The notes beneath the pieces are model-generated. The model was given only the letters and a program-made list of their open reading frames with translations, was not told the DNA's origin and ran no database searches. Position numbers and translations under genes: made by a program. A DNA stretch of 64,000 nt, taken from IMG/VR virus record IMGVR_UViG_3300033997_000478, positions 62,001 through 126,000 of that record; one strand, given 5' to 3'. Of the stretch, positions 38,040-43,836 are shown piece by piece (position 1 is the first letter of the stretch; the number at the start of each line of letters is the position of its first letter).

Positions 38040-40343
38040 ATGATCATGGCAAACAACAAGATTGCAACTTCCCTTGCACGCGCGATGGCTGCTACCCATC
38101 GCGTGTCGATGGAAGCCAGCACCGATGCCGAGCAGGGCAAAGATGCTGAAATCACCGACAAGGAGCTGGACCAGGTCAACGCCGAAGCCAGCGCCGAAGT
38201 CACCGATCCGGCGACCGATGAAACCGCCGGTGCTACCAACGACGATGGCGAGCTGCCGCCGAGCGATCCGGCTGCTGAGCCGACCGCTGAAGAAGGTGCT
38301 GCGACCGATGTGGCCGCTGACACCACGCTGCCGCCGGCTGAAGACGCTGGGAGCGACACCGAAGAGGTGCCGGTCGATCAGATCCAGACCCCGGCTGAAG
38401 AAGAAGCCGCCGCACTGAGCGAAGAAGATCCGACCGCAGGCGCTGAAGCCAATGCCGAGATCGAAGCAGCCGACCTGGGTTCGGACCCGGCCGCTGCGCC
38501 GGCAGCGACTGCTGATGCTCCGGTGGAGGGTGATGTGACTGCTCCGGCCGCCGATGGTGCCGATGCGATCGCCGTGGATGCAGGTGCCGAAGCTGCGGTG
38601 GAACCGGCTGCGGATGTGGCTGCCCCTGCGCCGGCAGAAGGCGTGGAAAGCACCGGTACCCCGGAAGCTGCCGAGGGTGGCGACGTCCCCGCTGTCGTGA
38701 GCGAAAGCGCTCCGGACAACAGCGAGCAGACCACCAGCGAACCGGCTGAAGGTGCGCAGAAGGAAGCCAGCGAACCCTCGCAGGCCGCTGACGCCTCCGA
38801 AGCTGTGGCAGAAGTGGTTGAGGTCGTCGAAGCGGCTGCTGAAGCCCAGTCGGCCGAAGACGTGCTCAAGCAGGTTGCAGGCATCAACGAAGGTCTGAAG
38901 GATCTGCAGGGCACCGCCGAGTTCATCAACGAACAGGGCGGTGTGACCATGGAATCGATGGCCATGCTGACGCTGGCTGCCAACGCCTTCACCCATCACC
39001 TGGGCCGTGAGCCGATCAGCTTCGGTGTGACCATGGAGTCCTTCGAGGACGCCACCACCCGCAAGCGCGTGTCGCTGGAAGAGCTGCAGGACCTGATCAA
39101 CGAGCTGGACCTGAGCGAGCCGGAGCTGGAGCGCCAGGCGCTGCAGTCGATCGACCGCATGGTCGAAGGCCTGAAGGCGGCCATCCCGAGTACCCGTCAG
39201 CGCCTGCTGGACGTGCTCTCCATCGCCTCGGCCACCGACGACAGCCGTGAAGGTGCGCAGGTCAAGATCGGCGACGGCATCGAAGGTGCCCTCTGCATCG
39301 ACGGTGCATTCCCGCAGGACGTGTCCAACGAGCTGCAGCAATACGCCGCGCTCGGTGAGACCATCCTGACCACCTACCAGGAAGCCGCTGTGCGCGCCGC
39401 CAAGGGCGCCTCGATGATCCTGAACAACCTGGACTTCACCAGCCTGACCTCCTTCTGGGAAAAGATCGGTAAGGTCGTGGACAGCGTCACCGATCCGCGC
39501 ACCAACATCAGCCGTACCCAGATCGAGCGCCAGCTGCCGGGTGGCGTCTGCCTGTTCGGCGAAGCCAACATGACCCCGGAAGTCCCCAACCCGGTCCTGG
39601 CCACGCTGTTCACCTACAACAGCAACTATCCGCCGCTGGAAACCGCGGTGGCGTCCAAGGGCGCGGCCAACGCTGAAGCCACCGGTCCGGCGCTGAGCGC
39701 TTCGAAGATCCAGCTGATCGGCAAGGCCTTCAACGAGCTGATGTGCTCCGAGCGCATCGATGCCCTGCTGGAGGAAGGCTCCAAGCTGTGGCCGGAAGCG
39801 GCCGACGCTGTGCGTCATCTCCAAGAGAACCTGGAGAACGCTCCGCAGGAGATCGCCCAGACCGCAGGCATCGACTTCAGCCAGCTGACCAAGTTCGTCA
39901 AGACCAACTACGCTCTGGCCACCTGGCCGCTGCTGAACTACCTGAGCAACCTGGTGATCACCGCCAATGCGTTCGTGCTCTACGCCGATCGCTCGCTCAA
40001 GGCAGAAGCACCGAGCGAAGTGGCTGACGTGAGCGAAGTCCTGCCGGCCGAGTCGGCCATCGCTGCACCGGCTGCCGATCCGGTCGTTGACGGCATTCCG
40101 CCGGCCGACCCGGCTGCCGATGCCGCTGTCGACCCGGCGGGTGCCGGCGACCTGCCGTTGCCGGAAGGTGGTGAGGAAGCTGCGACGGCCGATGCTTCGG
40201 CTGAAGGTGGTGAGCTGCCCGATGCCCCGGCTACCGATGCGGAGGCAGGCGCTGAGCCGCCGGTCGCTGACAGTGGTGATGGCGCCGAGCCGAAGAAGGA
40301 CGAGACCAAGCCGGAAGATGAAATTCCGGACCCGACCGTCTGA
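38040..40343 (+). CDS. Internal head protein with long Ala/Glu/Asp/Pro-rich propeptide and tail
   Basis: RVSME, VTME, VSLE sites; low-complexity acidic N- and C-regions. Confidence 0.75.
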   Translation: MIMANNKIATSLARAMAATHRVSMEASTDAEQGKDAEITDKELDQVNAEASAEVTDPATDETAGATNDDGELPPSDPAAEPTAEEGAATDVAADTTLPPAEDAGSDTEEVPVDQIQTPAEEEAAALSEEDPTAGAEANAEIEAADLGSDPAAAPAATADAPVEGDVTAPAADGADAIAVDAGAEAAVEPAADVAAPAPAEGVESTGTPEAAEGGDVPAVVSESAPDNSEQTTSEPAEGAQKEASEPSQAADASEAVAEVVEVVEAAAEAQSAEDVLKQVAGINEGLKDLQGTAEFINEQGGVTMESMAMLTLAANAFTHHLGREPISFGVTMESFEDATTRKRVSLEELQDLINELDLSEPELERQALQSIDRMVEGLKAAIPSTRQRLLDVLSIASATDDSREGAQVKIGDGIEGALCIDGAFPQDVSNELQQYAALGETILTTYQEAAVRAAKGASMILNNLDFTSLTSFWEKIGKVVDSVTDPRTNISRTQIERQLPGGVCLFGEANMTPEVPNPVLATLFTYNSNYPPLETAVASKGAANAEATGPALSASKIQLIGKAFNELMCSERIDALLEEGSKLWPEAADAVRHLQENLENAPQEIAQTAGIDFSQLTKFVKTNYALATWPLLNYLSNLVITANAFVLYADRSLKAEAPSEVADVSEVLPAESAIAAPAADPVVDGIPPADPAADAAVDPAGAGDLPLPEGGEEAATADASAEGGELPDAPATDAEAGAEPPVADSGDGAEPKKDETKPEDEIPDPTV

Positions 40344-40394
40344 TCAATGAGCATAGGCGGGGCCTTCGGGTCCCGCTTTGACAAGGAAACGAAA

Positions 40395-41804
40395 ATGTCA
40401 TTGCTCAAGATCACGCTGGAAAACATGGCTGCCGAACGGGCAGTCCAGACCATCCTCGATGAATCGCAGGGTGAGCCCGGCAGTGTCCTGGAAGATGTGG
40501 TTCATGCCGGTGAGATCGCCCGTATTGAAATCGCTGCTGACGACTACGACAACGCCGCTGAAGATGGCAACAACCTGGATGAAAGTCTGGGTGGTGTGAT
40601 TGCCGAAATCGAACGACAGAACAGCTTGGGCGGTTTGAGCATGGAGTCGATGGCACTAGCCCATCTGGCCCTGCGCGCCCATGGCGTCAAGCTTTCGATG
40701 GAAACCGATCATGTACTGCCGTCCATGGAATCGCTGACGGAAGAACGCACCTACGTCGACACCGACTACTTGCAGGGTCTACACGTCAGTATGGAAGGTG
40801 TCTTCACCGACATCGGTCAGCGTGCTGCTGCCGAGTTCATCCGTGCATTTAACCTGGCCTGGGTTCGTGTGTTGCGTCATCGTGCGCGACAGGCTAATCT
40901 GGCCAAGGATGCAGCAGCAGCTGGCGGTAACACCTCCAGCCCGGAGATGATCACCGCCGGTATGAAGGGTCTGCACCGTGACGGTCAGGCGCCCAGGGAC
41001 ATGCGCGAGTACATGTTCCAGTATCTGCGGATCATCAACTACATGGCAGGTAGGTTTGGCTCGGACGGGGAGAAGGCGGCAGAGGCCAACTTCAATGCAA
41101 TCCATCGCATGGGGGTGACCACTGAAACCAACCCGGCTCAGTTTGACAGCGCTTGCCAGAACCTGCTGAGCAGTTGGCGCGATCCGCGTTCGGCTCTGCC
41201 GGCCAACTTCTTCTACTTCAACGCGCCCGGTGGTAAGCGGCTGTTTGAGGATACCACACCCAACTACAAGGGCCGTGATAAACTCACTGTTGCTTTTGAC
41301 GACATCGCCACCAAGAACCTGCCGACTCGCATCGGCAGTCAAGGTACGGGTGTGAAGTGGGACGGTAGTGCAGCGCCGTGCATGTCCAACCGTGACATCG
41401 TGGTGGTGTGTAACGAGTTCCTGAAGGTGCTTCAGCGCATCTCTGCGCCCAGCGCAGCAGCTGCCTCGATTCGCTCCTTCGGTAGTATCGCGCTGCCGGT
41501 GGTGAGCCTGCTGGCGCCCTTCCTGAGCCATCGTGATGCTCGTGCCAAGTTTGCCATGGTAGGTGCAGTTGCCGTGGCACAAGGCGTGCGTCGTGCTAAC
41601 AACACCGCACCGGTCATCGATGCGGCCAGTCAGCGCGCTGCAGCTCGTTCGCGTATCAACGCGATCAGCCGAGCCGTCAACACCGTCTATGGGTTCCGCC
41701 TGCGGACCCAGATCGATGCGATCAGCAACCTGTTGTCGGTCAGTGGGGCATTCATGTCCTACGCCCAAGCCTGCTTGGCAGCCAATGCCCGTGCGGCAAA
41801 ATAA
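40395..41804 (+). CDS. Internal head protein, paralog family
   Basis: AAGGA RBS, ATG 40395; four SME sites; hydrophobic segment near the C-terminus. Confidence 0.75.
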   Translation: MSLLKITLENMAAERAVQTILDESQGEPGSVLEDVVHAGEIARIEIAADDYDNAAEDGNNLDESLGGVIAEIERQNSLGGLSMESMALAHLALRAHGVKLSMETDHVLPSMESLTEERTYVDTDYLQGLHVSMEGVFTDIGQRAAAEFIRAFNLAWVRVLRHRARQANLAKDAAAAGGNTSSPEMITAGMKGLHRDGQAPRDMREYMFQYLRIINYMAGRFGSDGEKAAEANFNAIHRMGVTTETNPAQFDSACQNLLSSWRDPRSALPANFFYFNAPGGKRLFEDTTPNYKGRDKLTVAFDDIATKNLPTRIGSQGTGVKWDGSAAPCMSNRDIVVVCNEFLKVLQRISAPSAAAASIRSFGSIALPVVSLLAPFLSHRDARAKFAMVGAVAVAQGVRRANNTAPVIDAASQRAAARSRINAISRAVNTVYGFRLRTQIDAISNLLSVSGAFMSYAQACLAANARAAK

Positions 41805-41809
41805 GACCA

Positions 41810-41847
41810 AGAATAGAAGGGGGCCGTGAAGGCCCTCTTCTTATTCT
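41810..41847. terminator. Intrinsic terminator
   Basis: AGAATAGAAGGGGGCC-GTGAA-GGCCCTCTTCTTATTCT extended stem. Confidence 0.7.
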
Positions 41848-42018
41848 GTCAACTTGGTGTTCACATCTACATAAAACCACATAACGGCGCAGGATCGTCT
41901 GGAGAAACCGACTGATCATCGGGGGATCCAGTCCATCTTGAGGAAACGCAACGACTTAAGATGGTTTGGGGGAACAGTTGGGGCTATCACACCAAACAAG
42001 TTCCGAGAGGCGAACACC

Positions 42019-42456
42019 ATGCGTAACATTGAACTTTTGACCAACCACGGTAACGATGCCCTGCGTGTCTCGGCCGATTACCCGTCCCGTCGCGGGATGC
42101 CTTCCCATCGCTATGTGATCTCGGGGTTCGATACCTCGGACAATGGCGCTGCGCGAAGCGGTGGTTTCATTCCTCGGTTCCAAGATGTTTCGATCATCTT
42201 GCAATCTGAGGGCGCTGCCAACGACCTGCGGCCGGATGGCGTCTCCAGTGACGCACTTCTGGCTATCGTCGAAGATCATCTCAGTGGTCTGCAAGGTGGC
42301 CCGGATGCATCGTTGAACAAGCAACTGGCGATCGAATACATCAGCCATGCTCGTCAACTGCTGGCAGAAGAAGCGGCGGCCCAGTCCTCGCACTATTCCA
42401 ACAGCACCCGCTGGGGTGGTTCCGAACGTCGAGTCGGTAGCCATCACAGCCTGTAA
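42019..42456 (+). CDS. Tad1-like (anti-Thoeris/CBASS nucleotide sponge fold) protein, divergent
   Basis: H.YVI ... IILQ ... DGVSSDALLAIVEDHLSGLQGGP matches the Tad1 pattern GV...LL.IV.DRL..FQ.GPF; GAGAGG RBS before ATG 42019. Confidence 0.65.
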   Translation: MRNIELLTNHGNDALRVSADYPSRRGMPSHRYVISGFDTSDNGAARSGGFIPRFQDVSIILQSEGAANDLRPDGVSSDALLAIVEDHLSGLQGGPDASLNKQLAIEYISHARQLLAEEAAAQSSHYSNSTRWGGSERRVGSHHSL

Positions 42457-42471
42457 CCAAACGTCATAAAC

Positions 42472-42498
42472 GCCCCACCGACGGGTGGGGCTTTATGC
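42472..42498 (+). terminator. Intrinsic terminator
   Basis: GCCCCACC-GACG-GGTGGGGC TTTATGC. Confidence 0.75.
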
Positions 42499-42521
42499 TG
42501 CCTCGTAAATGAGCAACAATG

Positions 42522-42545
42522 AAAAGAATTTCAAACCTATATTAC
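42522..42545 (+). promoter_or_regulatory. Putative early promoter
   Basis: AAAAGAATTTCAAACCTATATTAC, contains the exact phiKZ early motif TATATTAC. Confidence 0.75.
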
Positions 42546-42600
42546 TCTCCTGAACACTGGCAGTAAAAACCAGTCCACCAACCCTTGCAAGGAGAGTTAC

Positions 42601-43836
42601 ATGAGTACGCCCCATTCCACCTTCGCCGATGCCACCGAGCTCTTCGCCACCCAGGCCTTCATCTCCCATCTGGCCGATGCGGTCGAGGAGAATGTTCGCA
42701 AGGGCGATCTGCCCAAGGACATCATCGTCGCCGTTGACGGTGACAACTTGGTCAAGTTCTCCGGTGATAACTTCACCGTCAGCTGCACCAAGGTGATCGA
42801 CGATGTGCCGATCTTCGTCGTCCAGATCGCCTGCAGTCCGTCGCTGCGCGCCAAGCTCAAGGAATACCACACGCTGGAGTTCATCCACAAGCGTCTGCCG
42901 GAGTTCTTCAGCACCAGTGCTGAACAGCCCGACAGTGAGCACAACGTGCACGACATGCTCAAGGCCGCAGCGCTGATTCAGGGACGTACCATCCTCACTT
43001 CCACCTACCGCGAACCGATCGCGCTGCTGGCGGCGAACGAGCAGGATCATCATCGCGCGGTGCGTCGACTGAAGCTGGTCGAGGCAGAGTTCGAGGACAA
43101 GACCATCGTACTGGTCGGCGAGGATTTCCTGAGCACGCTCAAGTCAGCGCTGCGTGGTAGCGAAATCGAAGGTATCACCATCTCTGTCGATGACTTGGGT
43201 AACAACTACATCAAGTGGGAAACAGGTGAGGTGCATTTCCTCAAGGACGATCCGGGTATCTACACGGTCGACTTCTACACCAAGGCCGAACTGGCTTCGC
43301 TGACTCGCACCATCCTGCGCTCGCAGTACATTCAAGATACGCTCGCCCCGTACCTGCGCAATCTGCTGGATGACAACGCCGCCACCCAAGAGGTCTTGGA
43401 AGGACTGCGCAAGATCGCCCTGGCTGTCCCCACCGATCCGGAGTCCATCTCCGAACCCTTCTTCTTCCTGTACGCCAACCCGGCCGATGAGGCCACCATC
43501 CTGGAGCACCACATGAACAGCCATCACAAGAGCGAAGCCAACAACAACAACAACAACGACAAGCCGACCGCCGATGCCATCCGCGAAGCGGCAGGCGATG
43601 CGGTGGACACCGCCAAGAGCGGCATCGATCGCGCAGCTGAAGCCATCGGCAGTGCCGCCGAGAAGGTCAACGATGCAGTGCACGATGCACGTGAGCACGT
43701 GGCCGAAGCCCTGCTGAAGGAACCGACCTTCTTCGATCGCGCCACGCAGTTCACCAAGGACCACGCACGCGACATGGTCTTCGGCGCCATCGGCTTTGCC
43801 GTGGGCGTGGTTGCCACCACCATCATCAAGCGCTAA
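42601..43836 (+). CDS. Early protein with C-terminal membrane anchor (ElaB/YqjD-like tail)
   Basis: (AAC)6 poly-Asn linker, Ala-rich amphipathic repeats, terminal TM MVFGAIGFAVGVVATTII-KR. Confidence 0.75.
   Translation: MSTPHSTFADATELFATQAFISHLADAVEENVRKGDLPKDIIVAVDGDNLVKFSGDNFTVSCTKVIDDVPIFVVQIACSPSLRAKLKEYHTLEFIHKRLPEFFSTSAEQPDSEHNVHDMLKAAALIQGRTILTSTYREPIALLAANEQDHHRAVRRLKLVEAEFEDKTIVLVGEDFLSTLKSALRGSEIEGITISVDDLGNNYIKWETGEVHFLKDDPGIYTVDFYTKAELASLTRTILRSQYIQDTLAPYLRNLLDDNAATQEVLEGLRKIALAVPTDPESISEPFFFLYANPADEATILEHHMNSHHKSEANNNNNNDKPTADAIREAAGDAVDTAKSGIDRAAEAIGSAAEKVNDAVHDAREHVAEALLKEPTFFDRATQFTKDHARDMVFGAIGFAVGVVATTIIKR

What the first reader, a model, noticed from the sequence alone, without database searches (positions are those of the whole stretch)
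42019..42456. Divergent Tad1-like anti-defence sponge with altered pocket residues
Seen: HRYVI...IILQ...DGVSSDALLAIVEDHLSGLQGGP.....QLAI..I..A..LL. Established: Tad1 sponges with the pattern GV...LL.IV.DRL..FQ.GPF..REN..AL sequester Thoeris gcADPR and CBASS cyclic oligonucleotides. Here FQ is LQ, GPF is GPD, REN is LNK, and the basic C-terminal helix is replaced. Inference: the fold is retained with changed ligand specificity, or it is a decoy or inactive copy. The alignment is from memory.
Basis: partly seen in the sequence, partly recalled or inferred. Interest (0 to 1): 0.6.

Follow-up and report, generated by a model that had tools for sequence, protein, structure and literature searches.

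The report
Rewired Tad1-like protein, jumbo phage
A 145-residue gene of a 324-kb jumbo phage is a true but strongly diverged relative of the Tad1 anti-defence "sponge": it keeps the fold and the dimer, but every residue known to hold the immune signals has been replaced, so it probably binds something else.

Summary
The ORF at 42019-42456 (+), 145 aa, is real and carries the quoted motifs. It is homologous to Tad1. A profile of its own clade matches a profile of canonical Tad1s, including SBSphiJ7 Tad1 and phiKZ gp184, at 99.2% probability and E 1.4e-19. Its three PHROG hits are the Tad1 families. The 20 best Foldseek matches in the PDB are all Tad1 structures, though weak. A homodimer model scores 0.80 against 0.00 for the best control.

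It fails the functional definition of Tad1. The four gcADPR/dinucleotide contacts (CbTad1 F82, N92, R109, R113) are invariant in 49 canonical homologues. Here they are L91, K101, E118 and Q122. The two trinucleotide contacts are L99 and E106. Pfam's Acb2/Tad1 model does not detect the protein.

The changes define a small clade of nine proteins from Xanthomonas-type jumbo phages. The clade is under purifying selection (dN/dS 0.15-0.20) and has new invariant polar residues. This argues against a decaying copy.

The gene is the genome's only Tad1 homologue. It lies in the head-gene module and lacks the N-terminal extension of phiKZ's virion-packaged Tad1.

Most likely it is a neofunctionalised Tad1-fold binder, perhaps of another signal. 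This is a new variant of a known kind, and its function is untested.

The parts
42019..42456 (+). CDS of the Tad1-like protein (145 aa plus stop), stored as P0001
   Evidence: ORF and translation are. hhalign to canonical Tad1 gives 99.2% probability, E 1.4e-19. PDB searches hit phiKZ gp184 at 5e-7 with the single sequence and 6.6e-9 with the clade profile. dN/dS is 0.15-0.20.
42019..42240 (+). N-terminal beta part (residues 1-74). It holds the H30-x-Y32 and G36-F-D-T...N42 motifs shared with canonical Tad1, and the clade-specific invariant residues R25, R46, P52-R53-F54 and P72-D73.
   Evidence: Column table and alignment. The AF2 model has strands at 2-4, 16-20 and 31-35, with pLDDT 66-86.
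42241..42399 (+). Two-helix hairpin (residues 75-127), the Acb2/Tad1 hairpin equivalent and the core of the predicted dimer interface
   Evidence: AF2 helices at 77-92 and 99-128, with pLDDT 87-97. The hairpin superposes on CmTad1 residues 64-116 with rmsd 1.1 A over 53 residues, Z 6.4. Dimer contacts are listed.
42277..42279 (+). H87 codon. It replaces the R of the canonical D-R-L motif (R in 49 of 49 canonical sequences, H in 9 of 9 clade members).
42289..42291 (+). L91 codon, equivalent to CbTad1 F82 and SBS Tad1 F100, a gcADPR/dinucleotide pocket residue. Canonical sequences have F in 49 of 49; the clade has L, Q, I or K.
42313..42315 (+). L99 codon, equivalent to CbTad1 R90, a cyclic-trinucleotide pocket and hexamer residue
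42319..42321 (+). K101 codon, equivalent to CbTad1 N92 and SBS N110, a pocket residue. Canonical sequences have N in 49 of 49; the clade has K in 9 of 9.
42334..42339 (+). E106-Y107 codons. E106 is equivalent to CbTad1 T97 of the trinucleotide pocket. Both residues are invariant in the clade, and Y107 meets Y107' on the predicted two-fold axis.
42370..42372 (+). E118 codon, equivalent to CbTad1 R109 and SBS R127, a pocket residue. Canonical sequences have R in 49 of 49; the clade has E or D in 9 of 9, a reversal of charge.
42382..42384 (+). Q122 codon, equivalent to CbTad1 R113 and SBS R131, a pocket residue. Canonical sequences have R in 49 of 49; the clade is variable.
42400..42453 (+). C-terminal tail (residues 128-145). 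It is modelled with low confidence, is 10-17 residues longer than in canonical Tad1, and has invariant R138, near-invariant G140 and a C-terminal L. It may correspond to the Tad1 C-terminal lid.
   Evidence: pLDDT is below 50 for residues 131-145. The lid in CbTad1 is residues 116-122. The correspondence is inference.
42005..42010 (+). Ribosome-binding site GAGAGG, 8 nt before the ATG
   Evidence: Read directly from the sequence. It is conserved in relatives.
41842..42018 (+). Conserved non-coding leader between the upstream terminator and the start codon. It presumably holds the gene's own promoter.
   Evidence: 87-91% identity to relatives, as high as or higher than the coding region. No Rfam match.
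41815..41841 (+). Intrinsic terminator-like hairpin after the upstream 485-aa gene
42472..42491 (+). Intrinsic terminator-like hairpin directly after the Tad1-like gene, which makes the gene look monocistronic

Best explanation
The gene encodes a stand-alone, strongly diverged member of the Tad1 (Acb2/Tad1 hairpin) superfamily in a phiKZ-like jumbo phage of the Xanthomonas-phage group.

Shown here: it is homologous to Tad1. Its model has the Tad1 architecture of a beta part followed by a two-helix hairpin. It is predicted to form the same kind of intertwined homodimer. It is the genome's only Tad1 homologue. It is kept under purifying selection.

Also shown: every residue that experiments have tied to ligand binding in Tad1 is replaced. 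F82, N92, R109 and R113 of CbTad1 bind gcADPR and dinucleotides. R90 and T97 bind trinucleotides. The basic C-terminal half of helix 2 has become acidic, and new invariant basic and polar residues appear elsewhere: R25, R46, R53, H87, K101, E106, Y107, R112 and R138.

Inferred: the protein cannot work as a canonical gcADPR/cGAMP/cA3 sponge. It is a neofunctionalised Tad1-fold oligomer whose interface pockets now bind a different partner. The most likely partner is another small host immune or signalling molecule, which would make it an anti-defence sponge of changed specificity, made in the infected cell from its own promoter.
For: Homology: hhalign of clade profile A2 against canonical profile A4 gives 99.2% probability and E 1.4e-19 over 124 columns. 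hmmsearch of A2 against the PDB gives phiKZ gp184 at 6.6e-9 and CbTad1 at 0.027. A bona fide Tad1 (OLIVR5 gp79c; 5e-15 to CbTad1) finds this gene alone in the whole genome at 1e-11. The three PHROG hits are the families of gp184, the 201phi2-1 type and SBSphiJ7 Tad1.

Fold: the AF2 model has pLDDT 76 and pTM 0.70. Foldseek ranks 1-20 are all Tad1. The hairpin fits CmTad1 at rmsd 1.1 A.

Dimer: ipSAE 0.80 against 0.00 for the best of 3 controls. That mark was reached by 20 of 30 proteins solved as pairs of one chain and by 1 of 23 solved as single chains. The runs agree in at least 85% of contacts, and partner pLDDT is at least 75.

Rewired sites: the column table was validated by the SBS Tad1 numbering F100/N110/R127/R131. 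The roles of the residues come from Li et al., bioRxiv 10.1101/2023.11.15.567273.

Selection: dN/dS is 0.15-0.20 at dS about 0.5. Forty columns are invariant in a clade that is 47-99% identical.

Charge: the C-terminal half of helix 2 carries +3.8 in canonical sequences and -1.2 in the clade, while the beta part and the tail gain positive charge.

Plasticity of specificity within sponge families is documented (PMC12393519).
Against: No ligand or phenotype was or could be tested. The fold matches are weak in absolute terms: Foldseek E is about 0.05, TM is 0.42-0.52 and Z is at most 6.7, and only the hairpin fits well. The dimer pass may reflect the model's memory of solved Tad1 dimers. Positive pocket charge is typical of nucleotide sponges (10.1101/2025.07.12.664507), and it is reduced at the canonical site. 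The hexamer-interface residues are not conserved either. The position of the gene among head genes fits a structural role as well.
Confidence: 0.45

Rival explanations
1. It has a structural or cargo role in the virion. The protein would descend from the head-packaged Tad1 of phiKZ-like phages and would now serve as a minor head or internal-body component, or as a protein-binding adaptor, without binding any small molecule.
For: The gene lies in a conserved block of head genes. Upstream are internal head proteins (PHROG 'internal head protein', PF12699 phiKZ_IP). Downstream are virion structural and head-tail joining proteins. phiKZ gp184 is a minor capsid protein of the inner vertex complex (PMC11297242). 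201phi2-1 gp280 was found in virions by mass spectrometry. In the tree the clade is sister to these fused jumbo-phage Tad1s, with support 92/86. The canonical pockets are dismantled.
Against: The protein lacks the N-terminal extension of gp184, gp280 and FLC9 gp131: about 100 residues in gp184, about 70 in gp280 and more than 200 in FLC9 gp131. According to 10.1101/2025.11.23.690004, that extension is the part wedged into the capsid, while the Tad1 domain is freed and injected. The gene is flanked by terminators and has its own leader, so it is not embedded in a head operon. There is no virion proteomics for this clade. The sister grouping may be long-branch attraction.
Confidence: 0.3
2. It is an inactive relic or a decoy. 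A former Tad1 would have lost ligand binding and would persist without a function of its own, or only as a harmless oligomer.
For: All six experimentally defined ligand contacts are lost. Pfam's curated Acb2/Tad1 model no longer detects the protein. In the sister phages LucasX and RTH11 an even more degenerate Tad1-like paralogue lies next to it, which shows that copies do decay in this lineage. Li et al. report that 12% of Tad1 homologues carry substitutions at the gcADPR/dinucleotide site.
Against: dN/dS is 0.15-0.20. The replaced positions are themselves invariant in the clade (H87, K101, E106, Y107 and R112, with E or D at 118). This is the signature of a new constraint, not of drift. The frame is intact in all nine clade members, and the leader and ribosome-binding site are conserved.
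Confidence: 0.1
3. It is still a canonical Tad1 sponge for gcADPR, cGAMP or cA3, and binds them with other residues.
For: The fold, the dimer and the H-x-Y and GFDT..N motifs are shared with canonical Tad1. An R-x-G motif in the tail could act as the lid.
Against: In CbTad1 the double mutants F82A/N92A and R109A/R113A each severely reduce binding of gcADPR and 2',3'-cGAMP. R90A or T97A reduce cA3 binding. Here all six residues differ, and R109 is replaced by an acidic residue.
Confidence: 0.05

Closest known systems
Tad1 (Thoeris anti-defence 1) sponges: SBSphiJ7 Tad1, CbTad1 (PDB 7UAV, 7UAW, 8KBE-8KBH) and CmTad1 (8KBB-8KBD)
   Same: Homologous over the whole domain. Same size class and same beta part plus two-helix hairpin. 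Predicted intertwined homodimer. Shared motifs include H-x-Y, GFDT..N, G74, LLAI, D86-x-L88, G94-P95, A104, A111, L115 and G140.
   Different: All gcADPR/dinucleotide contacts (F82, N92, R109, R113) and both trinucleotide contacts (R90, T97) are replaced. The hexamer-interface W is lost. The basic half of helix 2 is now acidic. The tail is 10-17 residues longer. Pfam PF24729 does not detect the protein.
phiKZ gp184 (packaged, injected Tad1 of a jumbo phage), 201phi2-1 gp280 and FLC9 gp131
   Same: These are the closest relatives with a solved entry or a published function: phmmer 5e-7 and profile 6.6e-9. The tree places them as sister, with support 92/86. All come from phiKZ-like jumbo phages, and the genes lie near virion genes.
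   Different: gp184, gp280 and gp131 carry an N-terminal extension and keep an aromatic residue (Y in gp184, F in gp280 and gp131) plus N, R and R at the four pocket positions. The window's protein starts where gp184's Tad1 domain starts, at M101. It has no extension and none of these residues. The neighbours are not syntenic with phiKZ gp182-183.
Acb2 (anti-CBASS 2) sponge
   Same: Pfam treats the helical hairpin as shared by Acb2 and Tad1 (PF24729). Both are oligomers with interface pockets.
   Different: No sequence or fold match to Acb2 was obtained here. All significant matches are to Tad1.

Membership tests
Tad1 superfamily (homology) | Significant profile-level sequence similarity to established Tad1 proteins over the whole domain | tested here: met
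   hhalign of A2 against A4 (which includes SBSphiJ7 Tad1 and phiKZ gp184) gives 99.2% probability and E 1.4e-19 over 124 columns. The PDB profile search hits gp184 at 6.6e-9. The reciprocal search with OLIVR5 Tad1 finds only this gene, at 1e-11.
Tad1 superfamily (homology) | Match to Pfam PF24729 (Acb2/Tad1 hairpin) above the curated cut-off | tested here: not met
   The protein has no Pfam family at E up to 10. The whole genome has no PF24729 match. The model is weak in general: the canonical homologue P0040 scores 24.2 bits against a cut-off of 27, and P0007, P0008 and OLIVR5 gp79c get no hit in the local copy.
Tad1 superfamily (fold) | N-terminal antiparallel beta-sheet followed by two long C-terminal helices | tested here: inconclusive
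   The AF2 model (pLDDT 76.4) shows this order of elements. Foldseek's top 20 are all Tad1, but E is about 0.05 and TM is 0.42-0.52. With VIA-align, Z is at most 6.7. The hairpin fits at 1.1 A, while the sheet fits poorly.
Tad1 sponge (function) | Homo-oligomer: a dimer unit that assembles into a hexamer | tested here: inconclusive
   The dimer model passes: ipSAE 0.80 against 0.00 for the best of 3 controls. That mark was reached by 20 of 30 solved homo-pairs and 1 of 23 single chains. The pass may come from memory of Tad1 structures. The hexamer was not modelled, and the residues equivalent to the hexamer interface (CmTad1 M102, W103, K106) are not conserved.
Tad1 sponge (function) | gcADPR/cyclic-dinucleotide pocket residues F82, N92, R109 and R113 (CbTad1 numbering) | tested here: not met
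   The equivalents are L91, K101, E118 and Q122. Canonical sequences have F, N, R and R in 49 of 49. The clade has K in 9 of 9 and E or D in 9 of 9 at two of these positions.
Tad1 sponge (function) | Cyclic-trinucleotide pocket residues R90 and T97 (CbTad1) | tested here: not met
   The equivalents are L99 and E106. R90 is also not universal in canonical members: gp184 and OLIVR5 have E there.
Tad1 sponge (function) | Binds and sequesters gcADPR or CBASS nucleotides, and rescues phage from Thoeris or CBASS | not testable with these tools
   This needs ITC or native-gel binding and plaque assays.
phiKZ gp184-type packaged Tad1 | N-terminal extension that anchors the protein in the capsid and is cut off by the head protease | tested here: not met
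   The protein aligns to gp184 residues 101-214 only, with M1 on M101. The upstream 177 nt are non-coding and preceded by a terminator.
phiKZ gp184-type packaged Tad1 | Presence in the virion | not testable with these tools
   No virion proteomics exists for LucasX or for this phage.

The most novel reading that the evidence does not exclude
The clade is a Tad1-derived sponge that has been retargeted to an immune or signalling molecule that canonical Tad1 cannot bind. Candidates include canonical cADPR of type VII/VIII Thoeris, His-ADPR, N7-cADPR or a signal not yet described in Xanthomonas-like hosts. The ligand would be held by a pocket rebuilt from H87, K101, E106, Y107, R112, the new arginines of the beta part and the R138 tail. 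Co-purification or co-crystallisation with infected-cell lysate could then reveal a new bacterial immune signal, as Tad1 did for gcADPR.
Probability: 0.2. Interest if true: 0.8.

Novelty: new variant of a known kind. Interest (0 to 1): 0.5.

Why it matters
Sponge proteins have been the key to finding new bacterial immune signals. Tad1 crystals revealed gcADPR, and MoTad2 revealed His-ADPR (PMC12393519). A Tad1 clade that keeps the scaffold under selection but has exchanged every known ligand contact is a concrete candidate for a new specificity. Tad1 is so far the only anti-defence protein described in jumbo phages (PMC13282480). If the protein instead proves structural or inert, it documents how a packaged anti-defence domain is recycled or lost in jumbo phages of plant-associated bacteria. 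It also warns that annotating proteins as 'Tad1' by homology alone over-predicts anti-Thoeris activity.

Tried and rejected
- Pfam and NCBIfam scans of the protein gave nothing. Both libraries also fail on bona fide Tad1s, so this says little.
- The in-frame TTG start at 41938 was rejected, because relatives have frame-breaking indels in that stretch.
- The antisense ORF 41956-42447 (163 aa) and the other overlapping ORFs are treated as GC-rich shadow frames. The Tad1 homology is in the + frame.
- Synteny with phiKZ gp182-184 was tested and not found.
- LUCX_114 as a split-off N-terminal packaging domain of gp184 was rejected. It is a second, degenerate Tad1-like copy.
- The upstream 485-aa and downstream 411-aa proteins have no PDB sequence match.
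- A structured RNA in the leader was sought: there is no credible Rfam match. The leader's conservation is not exceptional for the locus.
- Expression could not be judged. Fragments of the region occur in wastewater RNA libraries, but only as short contigs scattered over the neighbouring genes too. This does not show transcription.
- Other sponge families (Tad2, Sequestin, Acb2/Tad1 hairpin) were not found in the genome at Pfam level.

Full report
**What is there.** The window is bases 62001-126000 of a complete 324,428-bp phage genome with direct terminal repeats. Its nearest GenBank relatives are the Xanthomonas jumbo phages LucasX and RTH11. LucasX has a tubulin-like protein and several RNA polymerase genes, so it is a phiKZ-like phage (PMC9009655).

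The finding is an ORF from ATG 42019 to the stop at 42454-42456 on the + strand, 145 aa, stored as P0001. A GAGAGG ribosome-binding site lies 8 nt upstream. Terminator-like hairpins sit at 41815-41841 and 42472-42491, so the gene looks monocistronic behind a 177-nt conserved leader. The longer in-frame TTG start at 41938 is not conserved in frame in relatives.

**Homology to Tad1.**
- Pfam and NCBIfam give nothing. They also miss genuine Tad1s.
- The three PHROG hits of P0001 are 22140, 23843 and 2428. These are the families that contain phiKZ gp184, the 201phi2-1-type protein and the founding SBSphiJ7 Tad1.
- Against PDB sequences, P0001 hits phiKZ gp184 (8Y6V chain I) at 5e-7 and CbTad1 at 0.38.
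- A profile of its own clade alone improves this to 6.6e-9 and 0.027. The clade's residue 1 aligns on gp184's M101.
- Agrobacterium phage OLIVR5 gp79c is a clear Tad1, at 5e-15 to CbTad1 and 2e-19 to gp184. It finds P0001 and nothing else in the whole genome, at 1e-11.
- A profile of the 9-member clade compared with a profile of 51 canonical members, including SBSphiJ7 Tad1 and gp184, gives 99.2% probability and E 1.4e-19 over 124 columns.

Homology is therefore settled.

**Fold and oligomer.** The AlphaFold2 model used a 58-row alignment and has pLDDT 76.4 and pTM 0.70. It shows short strands followed by helices at 77-92 and 99-128, and a disordered tail.

Foldseek ranks 1-20 against the PDB are all CmTad1 or CbTad1 entries. 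The scores are modest: E about 0.05, probability 0.75-0.97 and TM 0.42-0.52. The first unrelated hit is at E 1.7. VIA-align gives Z of at most 6.7. The helical hairpin (75-127) superposes on CmTad1 64-116 at 1.1 A, while the sheet fits poorly.

A two-copy complex model scores ipSAE 0.80 (runs 0.75, 0.80 and 0.81) against 0.00 for the best of three controls. That mark was reached by 20 of 30 proteins solved as pairs of one chain and by 1 of 23 solved as single chains. The runs agree in at least 85% of contacts, and partner pLDDT is at least 75. The interface of about 300 contacts is built from both helices, and Y107 meets Y107'. This supports a Tad1-like intertwined dimer, but it may partly reflect memory of solved Tad1 structures.

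**The pockets.** According to Li et al. (bioRxiv 10.1101/2023.11.15.567273):
- CbTad1 binds gcADPR and cyclic dinucleotides with F82, N92, R109 and R113 plus a C-terminal lid (residues 116-122).
- It binds cyclic trinucleotides at the hexamer's three-fold interface with R90 and T97.
- The double mutants F82A/N92A and R109A/R113A, and the single mutants R90A and T97A, cut binding.
- The SBS Tad1 equivalents of the first four residues are F100, N110, R127 and R131.

My alignment places F, N, R and R at exactly residues 100, 110, 127 and 131 of SBSphiJ7 Tad1, which validates the column mapping. In 49 canonical homologues these four columns are invariant. In P0001 they are L91, K101, E118 and Q122.

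Across the nine clade members, the first of these positions is L, Q, I or K. The second is K in all nine, the third is E or D in all nine, and the fourth is variable. The trinucleotide positions are L99 and E106, and E106 is invariant in the clade. The R of the D-R-L motif is H87 in all nine. The W at the hexamer interface is L or V.

The net charge of the C-terminal half of helix 2 falls from +3.8 (range +2 to +6) in canonical sequences to -1.2 in the clade. The beta part and the tail gain positive charge.

**A live gene, not a wreck.** The changes define a clade: P0001-P0006, P0009, P0010, P0019 and the RTH11 protein. All are 143-148 aa. None has a Pfam hit. Those with a long or complete record come from genomes of 305-327 kb.

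The clade is monophyletic with 100/100 support, on a very long stem of 2.48 changes per column. It is sister, at 92/86, to the fused Tad1s of the jumbo phages phiKZ, 201phi2-1 and FLC9. Long-branch attraction cannot be excluded for that grouping.

Within the clade, identity ranges from 47% to 99%, yet 40 columns are invariant. These include residues that are not conserved in canonical Tad1: R25, R46, P52-R53-F54, P72-D73, H87, K101, E106, Y107, R112 and R138. Pairwise dN/dS against two relatives that are 83-87% identical is 0.15-0.20, at dS about 0.5. This is the pattern of a shift in function rather than of decay.

**Context.** Gene order is conserved in close relatives:
1. Internal head proteins (PF12699 phiKZ_IP; PHROG 'internal head protein').
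2. Two large acidic proteins.
3. The Tad1-like gene.
4. A fast-evolving gene of about 411 aa.
5. Virion structural and head-tail joining proteins.

In phiKZ, gp184 is a minor capsid protein of the inner vertex complex and is processed by the head protease (PMC11297242). It is called Tad1, is dispensable, and its freed C-terminal part is described as injected (10.1101/2025.11.23.690004; PMC13282480 citing Li et al. 2024). 201phi2-1 gp280 was detected in virions. FLC9 gp131 carries the Tad1 domain at the end of a 338-aa protein.

The window's protein has no such extension. It is the only Tad1 homologue in its genome. No Tad2, Sequestin or Acb2/Tad1-hairpin Pfam match exists in the genome.

**Interpretation.** It is certain that this is a diverged Tad1 homologue. 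It is nearly certain that it cannot bind gcADPR, cGAMP or cA3 in the canonical way.

The most likely reading (0.45) is a neofunctionalised Tad1-fold oligomer that binds another partner at rebuilt interface sites. The partner is probably a different small signalling molecule, because specificity shifts within sponge families are documented (PMC12393519) and many new TIR-derived signals escape canonical Tad1 (10.64898/2025.12.03.692087).

The rivals are:
- A virion-associated or structural role inherited from the packaged jumbo-phage Tad1 (0.3).
- An inert relic or decoy (0.1).
- A still-canonical sponge (0.05).

Li et al. already noted that 12% of Tad1 homologues carry substitutions at the gcADPR/dinucleotide site and 6% at the trinucleotide site. 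The existence of such variants is therefore known. I found no study of this clade in the papers searched.

**Limits.**
- Only a dimer was modelled.
- Fragments of the locus occur in wastewater RNA libraries, but as short contigs that do not show transcription.
- Near-identical DNA occurs in subsurface, soil, indoor, fermentation and wastewater metagenomes from 13 studies.

Noticed in passing
L001:5532-5957 (LucasX LUCX_114) and L015:5542-5916 (RTH11): In the sister phages LucasX and RTH11, the gene directly upstream of the Tad1-like gene is a second, much more degenerate Tad1-like paralogue of 124-141 aa. It keeps the NG(V/L)..D..LAICED stretch. hhalign to the clade profile gives 94% probability, and a BLASTP segment matches gp184. 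The window's genome has no such copy.
   Followed up: partly
window 38040-40343 and 40347-41804: Two large proteins upstream (767 and 485 aa) have long acidic, Ala/Pro-rich regions and repeated S/T-M-E-S-like motifs. These resemble the S/A/G-x-E cleavage sites of the phiKZ head protease (recalled from memory, not tested). The 441-aa protein at 35193-36518 hits internal head protein PHROGs, and its orthologues in close relatives carry PF12699 (phiKZ_IP). This suggests a paralogous block of processed inner-body proteins.
   Followed up: partly
window 42601-43836: The 411-aa gene just downstream evolves much faster than its surroundings. Its nucleotide identity to close relatives is 48-78%, against 80-95% for the neighbours. 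It has an Asn run and a C-terminal hydrophobic segment, and no PHROG or PDB match.
   Followed up: partly
window 41842-42018: The 177-nt leader between the upstream terminator and the start codon is 87-91% identical to relatives, as conserved as the coding sequence or more. It has no Rfam match. It probably holds a phage-RNA-polymerase promoter, which was not identified.
   Followed up: partly
L011:4701-5393 (phiKZ gp184): The Tad1 domain of gp184 begins with a methionine (M101), which aligns with the start codon of stand-alone Tad1s. This suggests that the packaged form arose by fusion of a capsid-targeting segment to a complete Tad1 gene. 8Y6V chain I did not appear among the fold matches, so the resolved part of gp184 is probably not the Tad1 domain.
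   Followed up: no
window 41800-42600: Near-identical DNA (share of sampled words 0.74-1.00) is found in runs from subsurface, soil, indoor, food-fermentation and animal-gut metagenomes and in some isolate-labelled runs, across 13 studies. The phage lineage is therefore widespread.
   Followed up: no
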